This document shows, piece after piece, positions 1 to 62,200 of a DNA stretch of 64,000 nt. The translations under genes were made by a program, and so were the position numbers. The notes below the pieces were generated by a model. It saw nothing but the letters and a program-made list of their open reading frames with translations. It was not told the origin of the DNA and did no database searches. Each line of letters begins with the position of its first letter. Position 1 is the first letter of the stretch. Source of the DNA: Podarcis muralis. Lineage: Eukaryota. Location of the stretch: NCBI RefSeq assembly GCF_964188315.1, contig NC_135661.1, positions 45,198,001-45,262,000 of the forward strand. The letters run 5' to 3'.

Positions 1-760
1 CAAGCAAATCTCTTTAATACGTTTTCTGCTGAATTTCTGATAATCACTTTCAACTACAAACTGCTCTCCTCTTAGATATTTCAAGGGAGGAGGGAACCCT
101 TCACTAAGAATTGAGATGGGTTGCAGTTAGTTTACCTACATTCCATGTACAGTACATATCCTAACAAATACTGTATGGACTTTGAAAGGACATCAACCCA
201 CCTGTTGTGATCCTTTCCCTGATTATTACTGTGCCTTTCAAATAAGACAAATAAGATTTGAAAAGCAAACATCCCCATGACTTTTAAAGATTGTAGATCT
301 TTAAAATTTTAAGATTGTAGATCCCACCACGGCTCCACTCTTTTGGGTATCAGGGCTTTAATGGCTGTGCATCAAATTAAAAAGGACAGCAGTGTTTCTC
401 ACCACAGATATACACTGAGAGGTGGCAGCTTTGCCTGTTGAATTTCTGCCTACTAAGGGATTGTTAAAGGTTTAATTCTAATATAAAAATAAGTAGCATG
501 TCTATTTTGAGGCAAAGGTGTGCAATCAAAACTGCCTCTGAAAAGCTGCAGTTAACTTACATATCCAAGCTCGTCTATTTTGCTTCTGGACACGTTTGCA
601 CCAATTTGCTCCTGATTATACCCGTTGACAGAGGTTTTCCTTTCCCGGCAGGTGGCAACAGGGCCAACGTCACCTCAAGAGGGCGCCACACCGCGGAACC
701 AATCCCTTTGCCCGCGCTTGCAACGTGCAAGTGCTCTGCACCCTCGGCCCAGGCCGCGCG

Positions 761-768
761 TGACGTCA
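761..768. promoter_or_regulatory. Palindromic CRE (TGACGTCA)
   Basis: Exact CREB/ATF consensus about 180 bp upstream of the probable TSS. Confidence 0.6.
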
Positions 769-919
769 CAGCGCCACCCGCCCTCACGTCCGCCGCGGCC
801 CTTCTAGGTCCTCTATTTGAAGTTGGCGCCCAGCGGCTCCTCCCATGGTGCTCCGCGCGGCCGCTTCTCCCGCTCCCTCCTCCCTTCGCTCGGCTTCGGC
901 GGCCGCGGCTGCCGGGCTG

Positions 920-954
920 GCGCAGGCGCACTGTTCCTCTCGGCCGCCATTTTG
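920..954 (+). promoter_or_regulatory. NRF1-type (GCGCAGGCGCA, 920-930) and YY1 (GCCGCCATTTTG, 943-954) motifs at the probable CTCF TSS
   Basis: Consensus matches. A YY1/Inr-type element at the start of CTCF exon 1 is known from mammalian and avian CTCF promoters. Confidence 0.65.
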
Positions 955-1109
955 TGTCCGAGGCGACTGTGGAACGATTAAACCGCGAGCTGGTGCTGGG
1001 CGCTGGCGGCGGCCGCTAGCGGCGGGGCAGCGGCAGTAGGAGCTCCGCAGGGCCCGAGCGGGGCGGGGCCCGGGGCAGCAGGGGCGGCCCGGAGGCGCCT
1101 CCGGGACAG
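945..1109 (+). other. CTCF: CTCF non-coding exon 1 (5' end approximate)
   Basis: Begins GCCATTTTGTGTCCGAG...CGATTAAACCG, resembling the recalled mammalian CTCF 5'UTR start; strong donor CAG|GTAAGC at 1109/1110. Confidence 0.7.
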
Positions 1110-3493
1110 GTAAGCAGCGCGGGGGGTTTGCAGTCGCTTTCTCCGGCCTCTAGGTGTCACGATGGGGCTCGGGCTGGGACCCGCCGCGGCGCCGCCGATG
1201 GGGAGCGGGGCTTTGTCTCCCTCTACCGTCCCCATCGCCCTGATGCCGGCCTGGTACTGCCGCCCATCGGCCTCCCAGCGCAGCGCCTCTGCCGGAACCA
1301 GGCCGGGCCTGGATAAATAGACAGAGGCGCGGCTGCTTAGCTCGGCCTTGCCCAACCCGCCGCCGCCTCACCCTCTCCGCCGCCGCCAACCACGGCCTGC
1401 TGGAGTGACTCGCTTTTTATTTAACTCGTCCGCCATTATGGAAACGACTAACCCCGGGCGTTCCTGTCCCCGCCAAAAAGCTCTGTTCAAAACACCCACC
1501 CGCCCGCCTTGATCCTGGCCGAGTCGATTGGGTTTCCTCCCCTCCCCCCCGTTTCCCAGCTCCTCCCGAGCCGCCCCCCATTAACCCGCGGCCTAATCCT
1601 GCCACCTCCCGCCTCTTCTGGCTCGCTTCTCGTTCCGCCCGGTCGCCTCCGCCCCGCGTCGATTCCCGCCCGTCTCTGCTTCTGCTTTCCTCTCCCTCCT
1701 CCCCATGCCCGGACGTCCTCGTCCCGTCCCAGCTGACCGTCCCCGGCCTGCTCCGTCCGCGTCCTTTCCCCCCGATGGTCCTGCGTGTCCGCGCTGCCCG
1801 CCTGCTCCCGCCGGCCGCCGCCTCGCTGTGCGCGCTGCGGAGTGAGAGGCGCTGCGAGCTCAAGATCGGGACTCGAGCTCCCTCTTGCAAGGCAGGCTGA
1901 GCTGCAGCGCCATGCAGCGCGGGAGAGCGCCAGGCGGGGACGCCCGAGCTCGCCCGCCCGGCCTGGAACCGGGAAGGAGCTCACGCGGGGCTCCCCTTTT
2001 CACCTTTACCGGGGAAGGTCCTTTCGCAAAGTTAGGATGGTGTGAGTGAAGGGGGGGGAGACTTCACGATCTCACTCATACCCCCAGTCATGACTTTGGC
2101 TTCGACGCTACCACCTAGTCACTATTATCTTTGTGCAGATACTATTCTTAAAGGGGGGGAAAAAGTAATACTTTAAGGGAAAGCCCTCTAAAATTGCCAG
2201 AAAATAGGGCCACTCAATTCCGGAGGTTGTAGAGATCTTCCTTTATACATCCTCATGTATAATCCAAGAAGGTTTGGGGGAGGGGGATCTCCCAGCCCTG
2301 AAGAAGAGAAGTCTATTACTACTTTGACTCTATAGCTTCCTGAAGGTTCTCCTGCGGTTTTATTTTAAGAAAAGAACTCTTTCACAAAGGGAATATACCA
2401 GAAATTTGCATATTACTTTATATGCCTTGTTTTGAAATATATTGCTCTGAATATATGCTGTCAATTTAATCTGAGCAGTTGAGAACATGCTTGAGGTTGC
2501 TAGTGTGAAATTTGTGGGCCTGTTAGATGTATTTATCCAAAGTAGGTTAGGGTGAGTGATAGCAAATTGCCCAAGCCATCCTGGGTAATCTTGATGGATA
2601 AGTCATAATTGCATCACACTAGTGAACTGCCTTCTAAAATAAAATGGGGAGAGGAGGGGTATTGGTCATAGCTAACCAGCTTTGATTCTGACCATTTATT
2701 TACAGTTACATGTTTTTTACAGAATGAGGTGGTCCCTGAGGGGAGATTTAAGTAAAATAATAGACCCATGCTACCATAATTATATTATGCTAGCCCATAG
2801 TTGGTGCAGCATCTTGATGTAGCTAATGCTTCTGTGTTGTCAGTGGCCATCATTGCTGTTTTGCTGTAATAGCTAGAATTCTGCTTGATTTCTAAAAAAA
2901 TATTCTTTTGGGCTTCCAGTATTGTAGTGATTGTCTGAATAGTCATTTAAACCTAAAAGTGTATTCCAAACTAGTATCCCTCACCCACATATATTTTAAA
3001 ACACAGTTCTAAAGTCTTGCCCATTTGTCATTTGTCTGTCACTTTCCAATGCAAATGAGTCATCTCTAAATAACCACAGTAAGCTGTTTTATGGGTTACA
3101 TTCTGTTTCTTATTTTACTTTCAAACTTTCCTACCATGAAAACAGGTGGACCTTGTGTGCTCCTTAATCTTTTGCAGGCTTTGGGCAAGTAGTGTACTGT
3201 ACAAAGTGGTGCAAGGGAACAAATGAATTTGAGAGGCGGGGAGTAACTTAATCAAGGCTACTCTTACATATTCATGCTAATCTGATGGTGTTAGAGTTGG
3301 CTGATACTGGCGGCAGTAGACTCTATTGAGCAAAAGTTAACCTGTTGGGACTAGGCTGCACTGACATTTGAAAGACATGCCTATGTAACAGTGCACTGTA
3401 GTTCCATTTATTTCATTGGGGATTCCAGGACAGATAAAAGAAAGTACTTATTCACATATCACATAGTTAAACTATGGAGCTGTCTCCCATAGG

Positions 3494-53200: not shown

Positions 53201-56200
53201 ATCACAGGCAGCCAATGCAGATTACATAAGATCTAAGTATTATTCCAGTCCCAGTCAAGAACATTGTGGCAATGTTTTGCTCCTGTTGAAGTTTCTCGAT
53301 AAAGTATTCTCGCTGCTCTGGTTTTGCCAGAAGTGGCTTAGTCATGCTGGCCACATGACCCAGAAAAAACTGTCTGCAGACAAACGCCGGTTCCCTCAGC
53401 CAGTAAAGCAAGATGAGCGCCACGACCCCAGAGTCATTCGCGACTGGACTTAACTGTCAGGGGTCCCTTTACCTTTTTATGAATCTAGTAAACCAATGTG
53501 ACACAACAGGAACCCACTAATCGCCTATAAATCAGATTCAGACCAGGAAAATTAGTGGGCTTTCTACTTCTTTCTCCTAGGGAGACCCTAGCTGATGCTT
53601 TGCACCGAATTGTTCAGCTAACTCAAGATGATGACTGTGTAAGTATGGAGTTCTAAGTTCAATACCTGTGTATTAGCATGCTTTGGTCAAACTTTGAAAT
53701 CCTTAATTATTTCTGGTAAGTACATGCTCTCACAACTCAGTGGAGCTTCCTGTTGTCTGCCTAATTTCCACTTATTTTAACCTTACCACATAGGGATGGA
53801 CTATTTGTCCATAGTCACTATTGTCCATTGAATGATCTTTGTCATAGACTTGGCACTGTGTGTTTGTGTGTTCCATGCCTTCTGCAAACAAGCAACATAG
53901 TTATTAGTGTCTTGGCGTCTCTGCTACGTTCTTCCCTGATTTTATTTCAGTCTGTCGAATCCCTATCAGTGGCAGAATCTCGCCTGAAACTGGGAACCAG
54001 TGTTATCCTAGATGGTTTGAGAAGCAGGAGCAGTTGTCTTGTCATGCTGGATATCAGTGGTAATGCTATGGGAGACGTGGGTGCCAAAATACTGGCAAAA
54101 GCTTTGTCAGTGAACACAACACTCAGGTGCGTTCACTTAATTTCTTTCACTTGCATAGGTGTGTGTAGGTGGATATGTGAATTGAAGTTGGGGATAGGGG
54201 AGAAATTTGATTCAGTTCACACTTAAAGGGGAACTTACCTAATTTTCACTTTTGAATCAAGATGCAAACCAACATACAATCATCCTTTGAAATTCACACT
54301 TTTCTGAATTTTGCAATGCAGTTCTCCAGCCAAGTAATGTGTAAAAAAGTGGATATAATGCGGTAAAGTGTGCACACAGATGTATATATTATTGGAAATC
54401 ACATACAAAAATGCATTCTACTAGGAGGAAATTGCTTTGCAAAAAATGTGTATATTTGGCAAAATTGTGTGGCAAAAATGTGTATATTATTAGAAATAAA
54501 CGCTTAAAATGCTGGTGGGTTTTGATGAAGATTTTTTTAAAATTAGGGAACATGTGGAAATGTGAAAAACTGAATTTAAGATTGGGAAAAATGAGTAATA
54601 GAAATGGAAACATTTCCTTATCCGTAATTGGAGAGGGATTATTGTAAGTCTGTATACATGCTATCCCAGATGCTATCCTTGGTTTCTTCAGTTAAAATGG
54701 ATCAGGTGATGGGAAAACTTCTCTCTGAGACCTTAGAAAGACTGTGTAAGTCCAAGAAGACCAAATGTTGCCCACATATTATTTGTCAGCATGGCCAATG
54801 GCCAGGGAGAATAGGGATTATATTTCCAGCAACATCTGGGGACCCAAGGTTGGGAAGGCTGAATAGGCTGGCAAATAATCTGGCCATCTATAAAGCAGGC
54901 TAAAGAGGGCTCATGCTGCCTGCTTGGGACTGCAAAAATGCATTTTGAGGGAGGCTTGTGTTTTCAAGCACCTGACATGTCACAGTACATACCTTGTGAA
55001 CTCAAGGGCTTGCTGTGCTCTCCTTTGTGACTGGAAAGTAACATGCCTCTGTCAAGTCTAGTGTCTCCTGTGCAACTTGGTTCTATGCTGCAAAGCCAGG
55101 ATGCCCACATAGATCTATGTATGGCTTCCTTTGGAAGAAGGCCCCTTCCATGTGCATGCCTTTCTAGTAGCTGTTCATTTGCAGGCTGCTCTGGGGAGTC
55201 TAGTAAATTTGGTCCCTAGCAGTTTTGCAGTATCAAACAAAACCAGTAGTTTAATACAGTGGTACCTCGGGTTAAGAACTTAATTCATTCCAGAGGTCCG
55301 CTCTTAACCTGAAACTGTTCTTAACCTGAGGTACCACTTTAGCTAATGGGGCCTCGCGCGGCTGCCGCACAATTTCTGTTCTCATCCTGAAGCAAAGCTC
55401 TTAACCCAAGGTACTATTTCTGGGTTAGTGGAGTCTGTAACCTGAAGCGTCTGTAACCCAAGGTACCACTTTATTCTATTCTGAAGGTGATTAACCAGGT
55501 GCCTTTCGAAGCTCAAATGGACATGTGAACCTGCCATACATTACTGTTTCTATTCTAGCCCAGTATTGTTCACTCCAGCCTATCCCAGCCTGATGCCCTC
55601 CAGAAAATTTGGACTACAACTCCCATCAGCCCCATGTTGTGCTGACTGGGGCTGATGGGAGTTGAAGTTGAAAACATCTGGAGGACACCAGGTTGGAGAA
55701 GGCTGGGCTTCTCTGACTGGAAGTGGCTATCCAGCATCTCAGGCAAAGTAGAATCTTTCCCATCACTTGCCACCTGAAATCCTTTAAATGGAGATTCCAG
55801 AGATTCAGCTTGTAACATACTCCATGCAAAACACATGCTCTTCCACTGAGCTATGTTTTCTCCTCAGACAGGATAGCTATTTCCTGTGTTTTCCCTCACC
55901 ATCTGGTAATTGAAGAAATAACTGCTTCTGAACACAGAGACTTCATTTGGCTATTGCAGCCGTGAGAACCTTTCCCTTTTAGGAAAGTGTCTAATTCTTT
56001 TTTTAAAGGGGGAACAAGTCTGAGTCATAACCATATCTGTCATGTGAAGGTATAGTTCCTTTTGTTTAAAAAATCTACACTCCTTGGTCTGAGCAGGAGT
56101 TGTCATAGAGTGGGGCTTCTGTTTCTAAGTTTTTGCACCCTGCCCCCAACTAGTGCCCTCCATGTTTTGGATTACAGATTCCATCAGCCCCAGCCAATAT

Positions 56201-59200
56201 ATGCTGTAGTCCAAAACATGCAGAGGGCATCACGTTGGGGAAGGTGAAATAAACGCACACGGTTGTATTTTGCATACTTGGTAGGAACAAATTAGATGTT
56301 ACTAGGGAAACACAGGGTTCCCGGCTGACTCTTCTCTTCATAATGTTCATGTGAGTGTTGGTGGGTGCTATTTGCAGGAGAATTAGTTAGAAAGAGGGAA
56401 GATTGATCCTTCTCCCTCTGGTGATAATTCTCCCCTGTAAGTGCGTCCGCTCTGGGTCATATTTAAAGGTTCTGCCCTGTTGGGCCCTTAAACTTGAAGT
56501 AGAACCAGCTGTAGGGGAAATAGCTGTGGAAAGGAATTTGCAGGGAGTGTCAGCAAGCATGGAAAGGGTTTCCCTTCTTAATTTCCATGTCACTAAATTT
56601 CCTGTTACATTGGCAAATATGGGGCTGAGGCCATAGGTTTGCTAACATAATGTGTTGCTTGGATCATGGAATGCAGCTTTCCTGAGTTCAGAACTTTTTG
56701 GATACCTTAACACAAAGGTTTTTTTAAATAAACTTTTGATGCTTTTAAAAAAAATAAGTTTTAATTTCTATTATGTCTCTGAAATTTAGAGCTGGGTACA
56801 CATGCTTTAAATAAAAAAGGAAAGCAACGATTCTACTTAGAAATGCTTCTATTGTCTATATATTGGAGCTTGGTGTGCTTCAACTGAACCGTCTTCCCTT
56901 CTCATCTGCTTTTAGGACGTTAATTTGGGACAGGAACAACACAACATTGTGTGGATTCCTTGATGTTACTCGTGCCTTGCTAAGGTAGGTACCTCATCGC
57001 TGTGCTTTGTTGATGCCATCCTGGAGGCTCTGCAGACAAATTCTGTTCTTCTTTGGAATAAGAGAATCCCAGTCCAAGTGCCAATTCTTTCCCCATAAAT
57101 AACTTTGGCAATGCCATTTTAGGACCCAATAATGTCAGACAAAACATCAAGGGTTTATTCACTCACTCGTCTTCCTATATGATATATGCCACCAGTGCTA
57201 TTTTTCTAGAAAAAGAGGTGTCGGAACTCTCCATGAATTTGTAATGACAATAGTGCCCACCTGAGTGGTGCCAGAACTGCATTCTGGTGAGTTCTGGCTG
57301 AAAAAAGCCCCATATGCTACCATTGGTTAGCATACCCTTCTGCATTCTACATAGGACAAGCAGGCCAGTCTTGTCACAAAATAATAAATCAGGCTTCCTC
57401 AACCTTGGCCCTCCAGATGTTTTGAGACTACAATTCCCATCATCCCTGACCACTGGTCCTGCTAGCTAGGGGTCATGGGAGTTGTAGGCCAAAAACATCT
57501 GGAGGGCCGAGTTTGAGGACGCCTGTAATAAATGAATGCAAATCAGACATCAGAAATGATATTTTAAAAACCAGAAAAATAACATTTCAGCTGCTCGGGA
57601 TGTTCTGGAAGTGGCCATTCTCAAATAAAGGAACTTCAAAGGGAGGTTCCAGTGAGAAACAACTGAATTATATCTTATGAAGAAGTTCAGATCACCTGTG
57701 ACCTGAATCAAAATGAACATAAGAGGAGCACTCCACTGCAAAGTTTTGTTACAGCATCTACTTGTTTCACTTTAATTGGGAAATAGCCTGACTACTGTGC
57801 ATGCACAATTGTGAATTGTTTTGGGAGCCCTTAGTAGCCTAGGGCAGTGTTTCCCAACCGGTGTTCCGCGGCACACTAGTGTGCCGCAAGACGTTGCCTG
57901 GTGTGCCGTGGGAGGGAGGCGGGCGAGTCGGGCGGCGAGAGGCGGGACGGCGGCGGCGAGGATCCGCGTCGAGCCGGGGGCGGCTCCGCGGTGATGGTGC
58001 CGAGGTTTCTCTCTCCATTCTCCCCCCCCACACACACACAGGAAATAACACAGGATCAGCTGACAGGACCCGGCCAATGGGGCGGCGGCGGGGCAGCGCA
58101 CACAAAAGGGAGGAGCGCGAAACGGCGGCGGCGCAGGGCGGGAGGGCGGCGCATTGCGCGTGCTCAAACCCGCCCTCCGAGGCGCAGAGGGGAGCTGGGC
58201 AAGCGCCTTCTTCAACCACGCGCTCGTTTAAAAGTTTCCCTTTCAAAAAGGAAACGTGGGTTTCTTCCACCCCATTGGCTGCGACTCCGCCCACTCCGTC
58301 CTCCTCCCCCTCGCCCGCCCGCGGCGCCTCGCTCCTCAGCCTCCGCCATGTACCGCTCGCTCCGCTCCCTCCAGCGCCTGAGTTGCGCCAGGGGCGCCGC
58401 CGTCCACGCGCGCCAGAGGGGCCCGCCGACCTGCAGCCGCCACGCGCAGCCACGGAGGATGGTGAGCGACGCCCCCCCGCTGCGCGCGCAATGGAGGGAG
58501 GGAGGGAGGCGCAAGGGCGTCAGAGGTGACCTTTGCCGGCCTCTTGCGGGACAGGCGCCTCCTGCGCGGCTGAGGGGCCCCTTCCCGCCTTTGTGGGCCT
58601 GACGCGGCCTCAGGGTTCCCTCCCTCTCTCCACATATATAAATTGGCTTTTATTATTAGTGCTTTCGCATTCCTTTTTCTCCCTCCCAGGAGCTCCGGTG
58701 GGGGGGGGGCGGGCGGGGCTCCCCACCATTTACCCCCCACAACAACCCTGTGAGGGAGGCCGGGCTGAGAGGATTCCAACCCGCGTCCGCCCCCGCTGCT
58801 TCCTTCAAGTGGCGTCCTGGGCGAGAACAACATTTGACGGCCCCTCCCTCAAATATCCCTCATTTTCGCAATAATTCATTTTGGTACAGCTGCTTTTTCC
58901 AACGGATCGGTTCAGTGTTGTTATTTGCGCCCCTCTGCCGCCAGCAGCGTCCCAAATCCAGCGCTGCTCCCCTCCTTAGGATGCCAAGCACTCTGAATTG
59001 GGAAGTGGCCCCCTTGGGAAGAGGGAGGCTTGCCTCCAAGTAAAGATGAATATGAAAGTACCTTGTTTTTAAGGGCCTGCGGTGGTGGTGGCTGTTTAAC
59101 ATCCAAGGCTCACAACACAAAAACACAAAACTACATTACATGGGACAGTGGTACCTCGGGTAACTGAGGCTTCAGGTTACAGACTCCACTAACCCAGAAA

Positions 59201-62200
59201 TATTACCTTGGGTTAAGAACTTTGCTTCAGAATGAGAACAGAAATCGTGCTCCAGCATTCAATTTTTTTTATAATAATCTAAAAAAGTTAACTACAGCTT
59301 TGAAACTTCCCAGGAGAGGCCGCCCAGCGCGGGGCTCTCGCCGTCTGCCTGCCTGGCTGCCTGCGAGCTCGGCGGGCAGCGCCTCCGTCCGCAGCGCCCG
59401 CCTCGCGGCTCTCATTCCCTGCCCCTGCCAAAGCTCACCCAGCCAAGCCGCGCTCTCCTTCCTGCCTCGCTTTGCTGCCTCCTCCCCCCCCACCCCCAAA
59501 GCTTGGAGGTTCCCCGGCGCCGGCCCGCAGGTTTGACCCCCTTCTCACACCTGTTCGCGCTCCTTGCACGGAATGGGGCGGATGGGGAGGAACGGGGCTC
59601 GCCGCTGCCTCCGCTCGCCCTCCCCCCCTCCGCCGGCGGTCCCGCGATTCTTGGCTTTTTGGCGGTTGGCACAGAAGGAAGGCAAGGGGGGGGGGAATTG
59701 AAACTTACACTTTCGTGCGTCCCTCCCGGCGTGACGCTGCGCGCTGACGTCACGGGGCTGTGGTGTGCCTCGAGATTTTTTTCATGAAACAAGTGTGCCT
59801 TTGCCCAAAAAAGGTTGGGAAACAGTGGCCTAGGGACATCTAATGAAACAATGCTTGTTCCTCAGGAATTTTACTCTAAAAGCTATGCCCTTGCCCATAA
59901 CTGATGTGGCCCAGGCTCATCGAAGCCATCCAGAGAAAATGGAGGAAGTTGTGCACAAGGTAAAAAGCATAGGAATTGGGGTACTGATCTGAATGGGGGA
60001 GCACTCTAGATCTATCTTGAATTAGAACTCAACTGATAGGTATGTGCTGAATGAATGTTAGCATGTCGTATGTGCTCCAGTATGCTGATCATATGTTACT
60101 CAGTGCTGCTGAGTAAATGCAACTACTTATTTGGGAGGCCATAGAAGTGAGGGTCATGTGAGCCATGCCTCTTTTGCATGCTGCAGATACAGTCTTACCT
60201 CGCAAGGAATCAGATTCAAGAGACCTTGCCCAAGGAGAGATGCCGGTTACAGCCAGACAGTACAGCCAGCTCTTCTGCACAGGTGGGAAGCCTTGGATCT
60301 TCACCTACCTTCATAGCCTTACGTCTTGCATAGTCAGCTCTGTTCACATTTTAATAAGAAAACCTATTTGCACCACCCTGAAACAATGCACAAATGGAAA
60401 TGCAGCTAGCCTACAAAATTCACACTTCTCCAGATTTTGCAGTGCAATTCTCCTACCAAGTAATGTGCACAAAAAAATGCATATGGGGGTAGTGTGCATA
60501 AAAATGCATATCTTAATAAAAATAATATTAGAAATATAGCAGGGGAAATTGCTTGCAAAGATGTGTGCATTTGGCAAAGCTACATACAGAAATGTGCAAC
60601 TTAGGAGAAATGCACACTAAAATGCTGATAAAAAATTGTGAGGGTTGTTTTTTAAAAAGAAATTCCAAACTGTTTTGGAGAACTGAACTTAAAATTGGAA
60701 GAAAATAAGGGAACCTGAAATAAGGGAATATTGCATCCCAACCTCTTTAAAAGTCAAGTGCTGCAGAAGAGGGCCAAAGGGCAGAAAACATCTAAATGGG
60801 GCAAGAATGCTGGCATCTGCACTTTAGAACATTAAAGTGCATTGTATCCTGGTAAACTTTCTGACAAGAATTAGTGCTGTCACATTGCAGATGCAGGGAT
60901 TGGTGCTAAAAAGAGTTACAGCCAACTCCAGGCTTAAGGGGTATCTCGTAACTCACTGATCCTTCTGTTCCTCTTCCTTGCCATTGCTGTTGGTTCATCT
61001 GCCCTTTCCCAGTGTACAGGCCAACAAAAGCCAATAAGGAGGAGCAGCATCCTCCGCTTGCCTTTCCCTTTCTCTATGGGAGAGTGCTACAAATTGAGCC
61101 CAGAGGGACAGGACCAGTGAATGGGCAGCAGCAGCAACGATGAGAAGTTGGGGTTTTTCAGGGAGGGACCCTCTGAGGTCACCCTGACAAAGGGCCCCCA
61201 AAACCTGGAGCCAACACTGACTCAATTAAATGCAGCTAACAGAGACTGGAATTCTAGGGAGTGCTATACTTTTGTGTTGGTGGTACAGTGGTGCCCCATA
61301 TCTTGCTCTCTATTCTAGGCACTGAAGGATGCATCCCAGTCTGTGCATAAGTGCATTGAAATGCTGAGCTCTGTTCAAGATGTGGAAGTTAAAGCAGACA
61401 TCCTATGGGCAGAGGAGACCATCAAGGATGCAAGCCTTTCAATCAGTGTGAGCTCTCCTTCATGTGTGTTAAGGGTGCTTTCCAGGCAGGCGCTTAATCT
61501 GCAAACAGGTTGTTCACAACACTTTTTTAACATACCAGATTTTCTCCTAAAAGGGCACATCCAGATTAAATCAGCAGGAGGGCGGGATGCAGGCTGGCAT
61601 TTTTGATGCCAGTGATGTCATGTGCATGCTACAAAAACAGTTTACTTGCATGAGGAGTACTGATCCCACAATAAACACCTGTCTGCAAGCCTCCCCTTTG
61701 CTACTTTTCTTGTTTTGGAACTCAGTCATGAACCACTAAGAATTGATGGTGATGATTAATTGAATTTGTTATCACTTTATCTTGCTCAGGACAACCCAAA
61801 GCAACTTACAATCAAAAAGACAGATACATTAAAAAAACACCACCTGCCCTCTTCTAAAAAGGCCACAGATAGTTAAAGGCCAAAGACCTGGTTATAGAGG
61901 GAAGTTGCTGAGTACCTAAAGATATATAATGATCGCTCCATGTGAGCCTCCCTGGGGAGAACATTCCACTAATGGGGAGCCACTGCAGAAAAGGCCCATT
62001 CTTGTATTGTCACCCTCCAGACCTCTCATGGAGGGGGCACATGAAGAAGGGCCTCAGATCATGATTGTAAGTTAATTTTTAACCCGGATGTGTTTTCCTG
62101 TGGTAGTGTCACAAACCAAGCAACACTGGCAAAAGTCAGAATATCAGATGTGACTGAAGATGCCTTTTAAATTTTAATTACAAATTCAGGAAGAATGCAT

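What the first reader, a model, noticed from the sequence alone, without database searches (positions are those of the whole stretch)
58200..59145. Captured fumarate hydratase (FH) promoter, exon 1 and intron-1 start
Seen: inverted CCAAT (58274-58278), GC box (58285-58292), Kozak GCCTCCGCCATG at 58348, a 38-codon Arg-rich, acid-free peptide ending exactly ATG|GTGAGC, then GC content tapering like an intron leaving a CpG island. Known (recalled): FH begins MYRxLRxL, and its exon 1 ends on the second Met that starts the cytosolic isoform. FH is not a neighbour of CTCF/CARMIL2 in mammals, and no FH exon 2 follows. The intron signal excludes retrocopying, so this is a DNA-level transduplication of a housekeeping promoter and mitochondrial-targeting module with intact frame and donor.
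Basis: partly seen in the sequence, partly recalled or inferred. Interest (0 to 1): 0.9.

Follow-up and report, generated by a model that had tools for sequence, protein, structure and literature searches.

The report
Promoter-carrying hAT transposon in CARMIL2 intron
A 2-kb cut-and-paste (hAT) transposon inside a lizard CARMIL2 intron carries a foreign CpG-island promoter and an intact first exon. That exon looks like the mitochondrial-targeting exon 1 of fumarate hydratase, so this is a rare but already known kind of gene-fragment capture in a vertebrate.

Summary

**The vehicle.**
- It has 15-bp terminal inverted repeats with one mismatch and a perfect 8-bp target-site duplication, GCCTAGGG.
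- CpG observed/expected is about 1.0 inside the element and 0.1-0.2 outside. The step falls at the repeats.
- The element lies in the sense orientation in a CARMIL-family intron next to CTCF. It ends 30 bp upstream of the next CARMIL exon. No FH exon 2 follows.

**FH origin.** This is likely but unproven.
- The open reading frame starts MYRSLRSL (FH match from recall only).
- It is acid-free, with 9 Arg in 38 residues.
- GC3 is 0.95.
- It ends exactly on a second ATG followed by GTGAGC in phase 0, as human FH exon 1 does.
- That layout arose in 0.045% of composition-matched simulations.
- No tool could reach a lizard FH gene, so the parental locus was not compared.

**Splicing.** Joining to the nearest CARMIL exon is out of frame. 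Skipping that exon gives an in-frame fusion.

**Earlier notes.** The scan had already noted this element, other FH exon-1 copies and other Pack-hATs (SPR, PPAT) elsewhere in this genome.

**Verdict.** This is a new member of a known kind, the animal Pack-TIRs.

The parts
57837..57844 (.). Left copy of the 8-bp target-site duplication, GCCTAGGG
   Evidence: Identical to 59828-59835. Fits the nnnTAnnn target pattern that I recall for Buster-type hAT elements. It is the only TSD+TIR structure in the window and appeared in 0 of 30 simulated windows.
57845..57915 (+). Left hAT terminus: the 15-bp TIR CAGTGTTTCCCAACC plus subterminal GTGTGCC/GGCACAC motifs
   Evidence: The same terminus and palindromic subterminal motif occur in an unrelated eukaryote-like metagenome contig, L001.
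57916..58347 (+). Cargo: TATA-less CpG-island promoter-like region and 5' UTR
   Evidence: GC is 0.69 and CpG o/e is 1.01. It holds CCAAT at 58071-58075, inverted CCAAT at 58274-58278 and a GC box at 58285-58292. The motifs were read.
58348..58461 (+). Cargo: FH-exon-1-like ORF of 38 codons (a presequence-like peptide), ending on a second ATG
   Evidence: Translation is. GC3 is 0.95. The architecture is rare in simulations. It matches the layout of human FH exon 1 (PMC7400513, PMC7591281).
58462..59146 (+). Cargo: GTGAGC splice donor and intron-1-like sequence with declining GC
   Evidence: CpG o/e is 0.75 and then 0.54, still well above the flanks at 0.1-0.2.
59147..59258 (-). Truncated interspersed repeat inside the cargo
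   Evidence: 91% complementary to 55361-55470.
59271..59752 (.). Second CpG-rich cargo block of unknown source, with the CRE-like palindrome TGACGTCA at 59745-59752
   Evidence: GC is 0.67 and CpG o/e is 0.86. It has no Pfam match and no convincing exon. It may be more FH intron 1 or a second captured fragment.
59753..59827 (-). Right hAT terminus: the TIR CACTGTTTCCCAACC read on the minus strand, with subterminal GGCACAC
59828..59835 (.). Right copy of the target-site duplication, GCCTAGGG
56916..56984 (+). CARMIL exon upstream of the insertion ([22 protein letters not shown], ending in phase 2)
   Evidence: One search shows the native frame is continuous across the three exons. The next exon upstream, at 53.9-54.1 kb, matches CARMIL1 residues 549-609 with E 7e-12.
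59866..59959 (+). CARMIL exon whose acceptor lies 30 bp downstream of the transposon
   Evidence: Matches CARMIL1 (PDB 4k17) residues 630-664 with E 1.8e-5.
60187..60282 (+). Next CARMIL exon, preceded by a phase-0 intron and in frame with the FH-like exon if the 59866 exon is skipped

Best explanation
The interval 57845-59827 is a single non-autonomous hAT transposon, a 'Pack-hAT'. Its interior has been replaced by about 1.8 kb of host DNA.

The cargo holds:
- a CpG-island housekeeping-type promoter;
- a complete first coding exon with its splice donor;
- the start of the following intron;
- a repeat fragment;
- a second CpG-rich block.

The first exon is most likely a copy of exon 1 of the lizard fumarate hydratase gene, meaning the mitochondrial presequence up to the second Met. 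Capture probably happened by template switching or gap repair after a break in a hAT element. That step is inferred from the literature on animal Pack-TIRs.

The unit either arose at this site or transposed into it. The insertion duplicated GCCTAGGG in a CARMIL2 intron, in the sense orientation, 30 bp upstream of the next exon's acceptor. The branch-point-like CTAAT and the polypyrimidine tract were left untouched.

CpG content is undecayed, the TSD is perfect and the TIRs are nearly perfect. So the copy is either young or kept unmethylated.

If the promoter fires, its donor would most simply join the 59866 exon. That junction is out of frame, giving a 50-aa product and a probable NMD substrate. 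Only skipping that exon gives an in-frame fusion of the presequence to the CARMIL2 C-terminal half.

Shown: the element structure, the cargo composition, the exon architecture, the gene context and the frames. Inferred: the FH source, the capture mechanism and any transcription.
For: **Element structure**
- The 15-bp TIRs have one mismatch and the 8-bp TSD is perfect.
- This is the only such structure in 64 kb, and none appeared in 30 simulated windows.
- The termini share subterminal motifs with each other and with an independent hAT-like end in metagenome contig L001.
- The element has no transposase or other Pfam domain.

**Cargo**
- CpG o/e is 0.83 across the element and about 1.0 in the promoter and exon. 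The flanks are 0.20 and 0.11, and the step falls at the TIRs.

**Exon**
- The 38-codon ORF ends ATG|GTGAGC in phase 0.
- GC3 is 0.95, against 0.66 and 0.68 at positions 1 and 2.
- The architecture arose in 0.045% of simulations.
- Human FH exon 1 contains Met1 and Met44 (PMC7400513). Its intron 1 starts at c.132+1, directly after codon 44 (PMC7591281).
- An Arg sits two residues before the exon end.
- The MYRxLRxL start matches my recollection of mammalian FH. This is recall, not a tool result.

**Context**
- CARMIL exons lie on both sides, colinear with CARMIL1 residues 549-609 and 630-664.
- CTCF lies upstream.

**Known kind**
- A survey of 100 animal genomes found 370 Pack-TIRs, 208 of them hAT (PMC8277862).

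**Leads only**
- Earlier scan notes list other FH exon-1 copies and other Pack-hATs in this genome.
Against: - No lizard FH sequence could be obtained, so there is no alignment to a parental locus and no sharp capture boundary.
- The 38-aa peptide had no true match among 1.84 billion cluster representatives or in the PDB. Both negatives are uninformative. Vertebrate FH would be represented by a single sequence with a divergent presequence, and PDB constructs lack presequences.
- ORFs spanning the cargo found nothing in the 5.8-billion-protein collection.
- Similarity to mammalian FH, from recall, is confined to about 6 of the first 8 residues plus the terminal Arg-Met.
- The N-terminal hydrophobic moment is no better than that of shuffled peptides.
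- An earlier follow-up on a similar element in this genome judged its supposed first exon to be no better than chance.
- The second CpG-rich block is unexplained.
Confidence: 0.7

Rival explanations
1. This is a Pack-hAT, but the cargo comes from a different gene's CpG-island 5' end or from an unannotated locus. On this reading the FH resemblance is coincidental.
For: - The FH assignment rests on a few residues recalled from memory plus exon architecture.
- No homology search recovered FH.
- Arg-rich, acid-free peptides are fairly common in ORFs from sequence that is 76% GC.
- A sister element in this genome had no identifiable source.
Against: - An exon that ends exactly on a second in-frame ATG with a GTRAG donor is rare by chance (0.045%).
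- That layout is the known peculiarity of FH exon 1 (PMC7400513, PMC7591281).
- GC3 periodicity says the ORF is a real coding exon.
- From recall, the MYRxLRxL start agrees as well.
Confidence: 0.22
2. The CpG island is a native internal promoter of CARMIL2, and the flanking repeats are unrelated transposon remnants or chance.
For: Intragenic CpG islands and alternative promoters are common in vertebrate genes.
Against: - One left end and one right end lie in the correct inverted orientation and are flanked by an identical 8-bp duplication.
- The CpG o/e step coincides with the TIRs.
- Removing the element and one TSD copy leaves an ordinary 890-bp intron.
Confidence: 0.03
3. This is an assembly artefact, in which a contig from the true FH 5' end was misjoined into the CARMIL2 intron.
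For: GC-rich promoters are sometimes misplaced in assemblies.
Against: - The window contains no N.
- The junctions are precise transposon ends with a TSD, which a misjoin would not create.
- The CARMIL exons continue in order and in frame on both sides.
Confidence: 0.02

Closest known systems
Animal Pack-TIR / Pack-hAT elements (Tan et al. 2021, Nat Commun, PMC8277862)
   Same: A non-autonomous hAT with TIRs and an 8-bp TSD, whose interior is host DNA. hAT is the most frequent carrier in animals (208 of 370). That paper also describes 5' gene-end cargo, such as the CAPSL 5' UTR in hAT-N8_XT of Xenopus.
   Different: - The cargo here is a whole CpG-island promoter plus an intact coding first exon, donor and intron start, about 1.8 kb.
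- The host is a squamate, and a whole-word text search of that paper for lizard or Anolis found neither word.
- If the other FH-like copies noted in this genome belong to the same element, it would be multicopy. That paper found only 4 multicopy cases among 370.
Plant Pack-MULEs (Jiang et al. 2004, cited in PMC8616336)
   Same: A TIR transposon carrying gene fragments. From my own knowledge, they prefer GC-rich 5' ends of genes. They are flanked by a TSD, which proves a single mobile unit.
   Different: A different superfamily (Mutator, with a 9-11 bp TSD) and a different kingdom. Pack-MULEs are abundant, whereas animal cases are rare.
Helitron capture of the NUBPL promoter, first exon and intron start in vespertilionid bats (Pritham and Feschotte 2007; recalled, not checked here)
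   Same: The same kind of cargo in a vertebrate: promoter, 5' UTR, exon 1 and part of intron 1 of a housekeeping gene, spread by a DNA transposon.
   Different: Helitrons have no TIRs and make no TSD. This element has both, so it is not a Helitron.
Fumarate hydratase (FH) exon 1
   Same: The first Met opens an Arg-rich, acid-free presequence. The exon ends exactly on the second in-frame Met, in phase 0, with Arg two residues before the boundary (human: PMC7400513, PMC7591281).
   Different: It has 38 rather than 44 codons. The middle of the peptide is not recognisably similar to mammalian FH, as recalled. No FH exons 2-10 follow. The lizard FH was not available for comparison.

Membership tests
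hAT-superfamily non-autonomous transposon | Short terminal inverted repeats at both ends | tested here: met
   CAGTGTTTCCCAACC and CACTGTTTCCCAACC agree at 14 of 15 positions, with shared subterminal GGCACAC motifs.
hAT-superfamily non-autonomous transposon | 8-bp target-site duplication | tested here: met
   GCCTAGGG occurs on both sides. It was unique in the window and absent from 30 simulations. The central TA fits the Buster-type pattern nnnTAnnn, which I recall rather than tested.
hAT-superfamily non-autonomous transposon | Termini shared with an autonomous, transposase-encoding hAT family | tested here: inconclusive
   The same 30-nt terminus is present in one unrelated contig, L001. That contig ends before any transposase, and no repeat library was available.
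Pack-TIR (transduplicating element) | The interior is not transposon sequence and encodes no transposase | tested here: met
   The cargo ORFs have no Pfam domain. The interior has CpG-island composition and promoter, exon and intron features.
Pack-TIR (transduplicating element) | An identifiable parental locus elsewhere in the genome, with sharp boundaries of homology | not testable with these tools
   No vertebrate genome collection was reachable. Protein and exact look-ups found nothing.
FH exon 1 copy | Sequence homology to the FH presequence and 5' region of the same or a related species | not testable with these tools
   The lizard FH was not retrievable. The representative library gave only a spurious hit. 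The mammalian N-terminus is known to me only from recall.
FH exon 1 copy | The exon holds two in-frame Met codons and ends exactly on the second, in phase 0 | tested here: met
   The ORF runs 58348-58461 and ends ATG|GTGAGC. In human, Met1 and Met44 lie in exon 1 (PMC7400513) and the intron starts at c.132+1 (PMC7591281).
FH exon 1 copy | Composition of a mitochondrial presequence | tested here: inconclusive
   The peptide has 9 Arg, 2 His and no Asp or Glu. However, its hydrophobic moment is no better than that of shuffled peptides, and no dedicated predictor was available.
Processed retrocopy | Intronless, with a poly(A) tail, a variable-length TSD and no promoter | tested here: not met
   Promoter-like sequence, an intact donor and intron-like sequence are all present. 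There is no poly(A), and the ends are TIRs.
Helitron gene capture | 5'-TC...CTRR-3' ends, a 3' hairpin and no TIR or TSD | tested here: not met
   The element has TIRs and an 8-bp TSD.

The most novel reading that the evidence does not exclude
A recently active lizard hAT family repeatedly captures CpG-island promoters together with first exons. Earlier notes name FH here and SPR, PPAT and a RANBP9-like gene elsewhere. The family then scatters these cargoes as still-unmethylated, potentially live promoters. On this reading, this copy gives CARMIL2 an internal promoter and a phase-0 mitochondrial-presequence exon. When the 59866 exon is skipped, that exon fuses in frame to the CARMIL2 C-terminal half, which would be exon shuffling by a DNA transposon caught in progress.
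Probability: 0.07. Interest if true: 0.75.

Novelty: new member of a known kind. Interest (0 to 1): 0.45.

Why it matters
Gene-fragment capture by cut-and-paste transposons is routine in plants but rare and mostly single-copy in animals. This element carries a complete promoter, first exon and donor with undecayed CpGs, sitting sense-oriented just upstream of an exon of a host gene. That makes it a clean vertebrate example of how DNA transposons can move promoters and targeting peptides around a genome.

Together with the sister elements already noted in this lizard genome, it suggests a hAT family with a bias for the 5' ends of genes. That bias could be tested directly with the genome and RNA-seq data. 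On its own, this is one more member of a described class, and its source gene is still unverified.

Tried and rejected
**Searches that led nowhere**
1. Protein searches with the 233-aa and 84-aa ORFs through the exon gave no hits.
2. phmmer of the 38-aa peptide against 1.84 billion representatives returned one spurious repeat protein.
3. I built a composite alignment of the CTCF ORF plus the peptide, to lift the length filter so that roughly 500-aa FH proteins could be candidates. The 120 listed hits were all CTCF, so any FH hit stayed hidden.
4. Exact look-ups of 11 window ORFs were not in the collection, so no other copies or empty sites could be fetched.
5. A PDB search with the peptide found nothing.
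6. A text search for FH N-terminal strings found no papers.
7. A viral-contig scan for the exon found nothing.
8. The metagenome scan for the terminus found only an unrelated eukaryote-like contig.
9. Rfam found nothing inside the element.

**Readings rejected**
- A real FH gene at this site: CARMIL exons follow and no fumarase motifs are present.
- A retrocopy.
- A Helitron.
- Two independent MITEs flanking a native island: the single matched TSD argues against it.
- An in-frame fusion through the nearest acceptor: that junction is frameshifted, with a stop after 12 codons.

Full report
**1. The observation**

- inverted CCAAT (ATTGG) at 58274-58278;
- an inverted GC box (CTCCGCCC) at 58285-58292;
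- GCCTCCGCCATG with the ATG at 58348;
- a 38-codon [41 protein letters not shown], with 9 Arg, 2 His and no acidic residue;
- an end exactly on ATG followed by GTGAGC at 58462.

GC then declines from 0.78 to about 0.5 and reaches 0.30 near 59200.

Two tests show the ORF is more than a chance reading frame in GC-rich DNA.
- Third codon positions are 95% GC, against 66% and 68% at positions 1 and 2. Only 1.4% of 114-nt windows from the CpG islands of this window reach that gap.
- An ORF of the form ATG, 25-60 sense codons, ATG|GTRAG arose in 0.045% of 20,000 composition-matched simulations. The acid-free, basic version arose in 0.01%.

**2. The surroundings**

- The window has no N.
- CTCF lies on the + strand at about 11.8-20 kb. 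Its first coding exon finds named CTCF proteins at 87-92% identity, and zinc fingers are present.
- A CARMIL-family gene follows on the + strand to the end of the window.
- The exon at 53.9-54.1 kb matches CARMIL1 (PDB 4k17) residues 549-609 with E 7e-12.
- The exon at 59866-59959 matches residues 630-664 with E 1.8e-5.
- Exons 56916-56984, 59866-59959 and 60187-60282 read through in one frame.
- Being next to CTCF, the gene is CARMIL2. That assignment rests on synteny from general knowledge.

So the FH-like exon sits inside a CARMIL2 intron on the sense strand. What follows it is CARMIL2, not FH. No class-II fumarase signature occurs anywhere in the window apart from one chance pentapeptide on the other strand.

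**3. What the CpG island is**

- The repeat search found inverted repeats at 57838-57859 and 59813-59834.
- Read closely, these are 15-bp terminal inverted repeats, CAGTGTTTCCCAACC and CACTGTTTCCCAACC. They are flanked by a perfect 8-bp direct duplication, GCCTAGGG, at 57837-57844 and 59828-59835.
- This is the only TIR+TSD structure of its kind in the 64 kb, and none arose in 30 simulated windows.
- The two ends also share subterminal GGCACAC/GTGTGCC motifs.
- The same 30-nt terminus occurs in an unrelated eukaryote-like metagenome contig. It is therefore a genuine transposon end.
- An 8-bp TSD with central TA and a CAGTG-type TIR are hAT features. The Buster-type pattern is recalled knowledge.
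- The interior encodes no transposase or any Pfam domain.
- CpG observed/expected is about 1.0 in the promoter and exon part and 0.83 over the whole element. The flanks are 0.20 and 0.11, and the step falls at the TIRs. For comparison, the CTCF promoter island scores 0.93.

The CpG island was therefore imported as the cargo of one 1,983-bp non-autonomous hAT element. I reached it independently and tested it.

**4. Cargo anatomy**

| Coordinates | Content |
|---|---|
| 57916-58347 | TATA-less promoter-like sequence, with a forward CCAAT at 58071 and an inverted one at 58274 |
| 58348-58461 | the exon |
| 58462-59146 | donor and intron-like sequence |
| 59147-59258 | truncated interspersed repeat, 91% like 55361-55470 |
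| 59271-59752 | second CpG-rich block with a TGACGTCA palindrome and no convincing exon or domain |

The second block may be further FH intron 1 or a second captured fragment.

**5. Is the exon FH exon 1?**

Evidence from the literature:
- Human FH exon 1 contains the mitochondrial targeting sequence and two in-frame ATGs, Met1 and Met44. The cytosolic form starts at Met44 (PMC7400513).
- A human splice variant named c.132+1G>C shows that intron 1 begins directly after codon 44 (PMC7591281).
- An exon that runs from the initiator Met exactly to a second Met in phase 0 is what is seen here. Arg also sits two residues before the boundary.

From recall only, mammalian FH starts MYRALRLL. That would give 6 of the first 8 residues identical.

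I could not obtain any lizard FH sequence:
- Two ORF searches and the peptide search against 1.84 billion representatives gave nothing true.
- A composite-alignment trick was swamped by CTCF hits.
- Exact look-ups failed.
- PDB entries lack presequences.

These negatives say little. Vertebrate FH is collapsed to one representative with a divergent presequence, and this genome's ORFs are not in the collection. I put the FH source at about 0.75 and the Pack-hAT structure at about 0.93.

**6. Likely history and consequences**

- Animal Pack-TIRs are described. A survey found 370 in 100 genomes, 208 of them hAT, mostly single-copy. They were attributed to gap-filling repair as well as to transposition (PMC8277862).
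- By inference, a hAT element suffered a break, and repair copied the FH 5' region, and perhaps another fragment, between its ends.
- The unit either arose here or transposed here.
- Without the element and one TSD copy, the intron is 890 bp.
- The insertion is 30 bp upstream of the acceptor of exon 59866. It leaves the CTAAT branch-point-like motif and the polypyrimidine tract intact, so normal CARMIL2 splicing is probably preserved.
- The intact CpGs, perfect TSD and near-perfect TIRs indicate a young insertion or protection from germline methylation.

If the promoter is active:
- The donor at 58461 joined to the nearest acceptor at 59866 is out of frame and stops after 12 codons.
- Joined to 60187, skipping one exon, it is in frame with the CARMIL2 C-terminal half.

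This qualifies note s1-181856. An in-frame fusion needs exon skipping.

**7. Relation to earlier notes of this scan (leads, not evidence)**

- The notes name the genome as the wall lizard Podarcis muralis. I did not verify this. Weak sub-threshold matches of nearby MITEs to mir-5408, a family I recall as described from Anolis, fit a squamate.
- They list other Pack-hATs with SPR, PPAT and RANBP9-like cargo.
- They list two further FH exon-1 copies elsewhere. One has an in-frame stop, and one is followed by no FH exons.
- If those are copies of this element, it is multicopy, which is rare in animals.
- One sister element had a 'first exon' judged no better than chance. The tests show that this one is better than chance.

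**8. Verdict**

The transduplication is real and its mechanism is identified. The FH source is probable but untested.
- This is a new member of a known kind and is of moderate interest.

Noticed in passing
L001:464-579 (metagenome contig Ga0081606_1012876): An unrelated, AT-richer, eukaryote-like metagenome contig carries the same 30-nt hAT terminus, CAGTGTTTCCCAACC followed by the GTGTGCCGCGGCACAC palindrome. This hints that the hAT family is widespread or has been horizontally transferred. The contig ends before the other terminus.
   Followed up: partly
window 59271-59752: The second CpG-rich block in the cargo (GC 0.67, CpG o/e 0.86) has a TGACGTCA palindrome at 59745-59752 and a GTAAGT on the minus strand near 59706-59711. 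It could be a second captured 5' end in the opposite orientation, or more of the same intron.
   Followed up: partly
window 55575-55706 and 57390-57525: Palindromic MITE-like repeats with 58-60-nt arms give sub-threshold Rfam matches to the mir-5408 precursor (41 bits against a gathering score of 90). They are probably the repeat family from which that miRNA family derives.
   Followed up: no
window 55255-55473 and 59147-59258: An interspersed repeat with internal AGTGGTACCTCGGGTTAAGAAC inverted repeats. A truncated copy lies inside the transposon cargo, 91% like the full copy 3.7 kb upstream.
   Followed up: partly
window 501-2200: A large CpG island (GC 0.65, CpG o/e 0.93) lies about 10 kb upstream of the first coding exon of CTCF. 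It is presumably the CTCF promoter and 5' UTR exon.
   Followed up: no
window 54253-54348 and 60379-60474: A 96-nt direct repeat at 72% identity, with neighbouring AT-rich GTGCA-type motifs, occurs in two different CARMIL2 introns. It is another interspersed repeat family.
   Followed up: no
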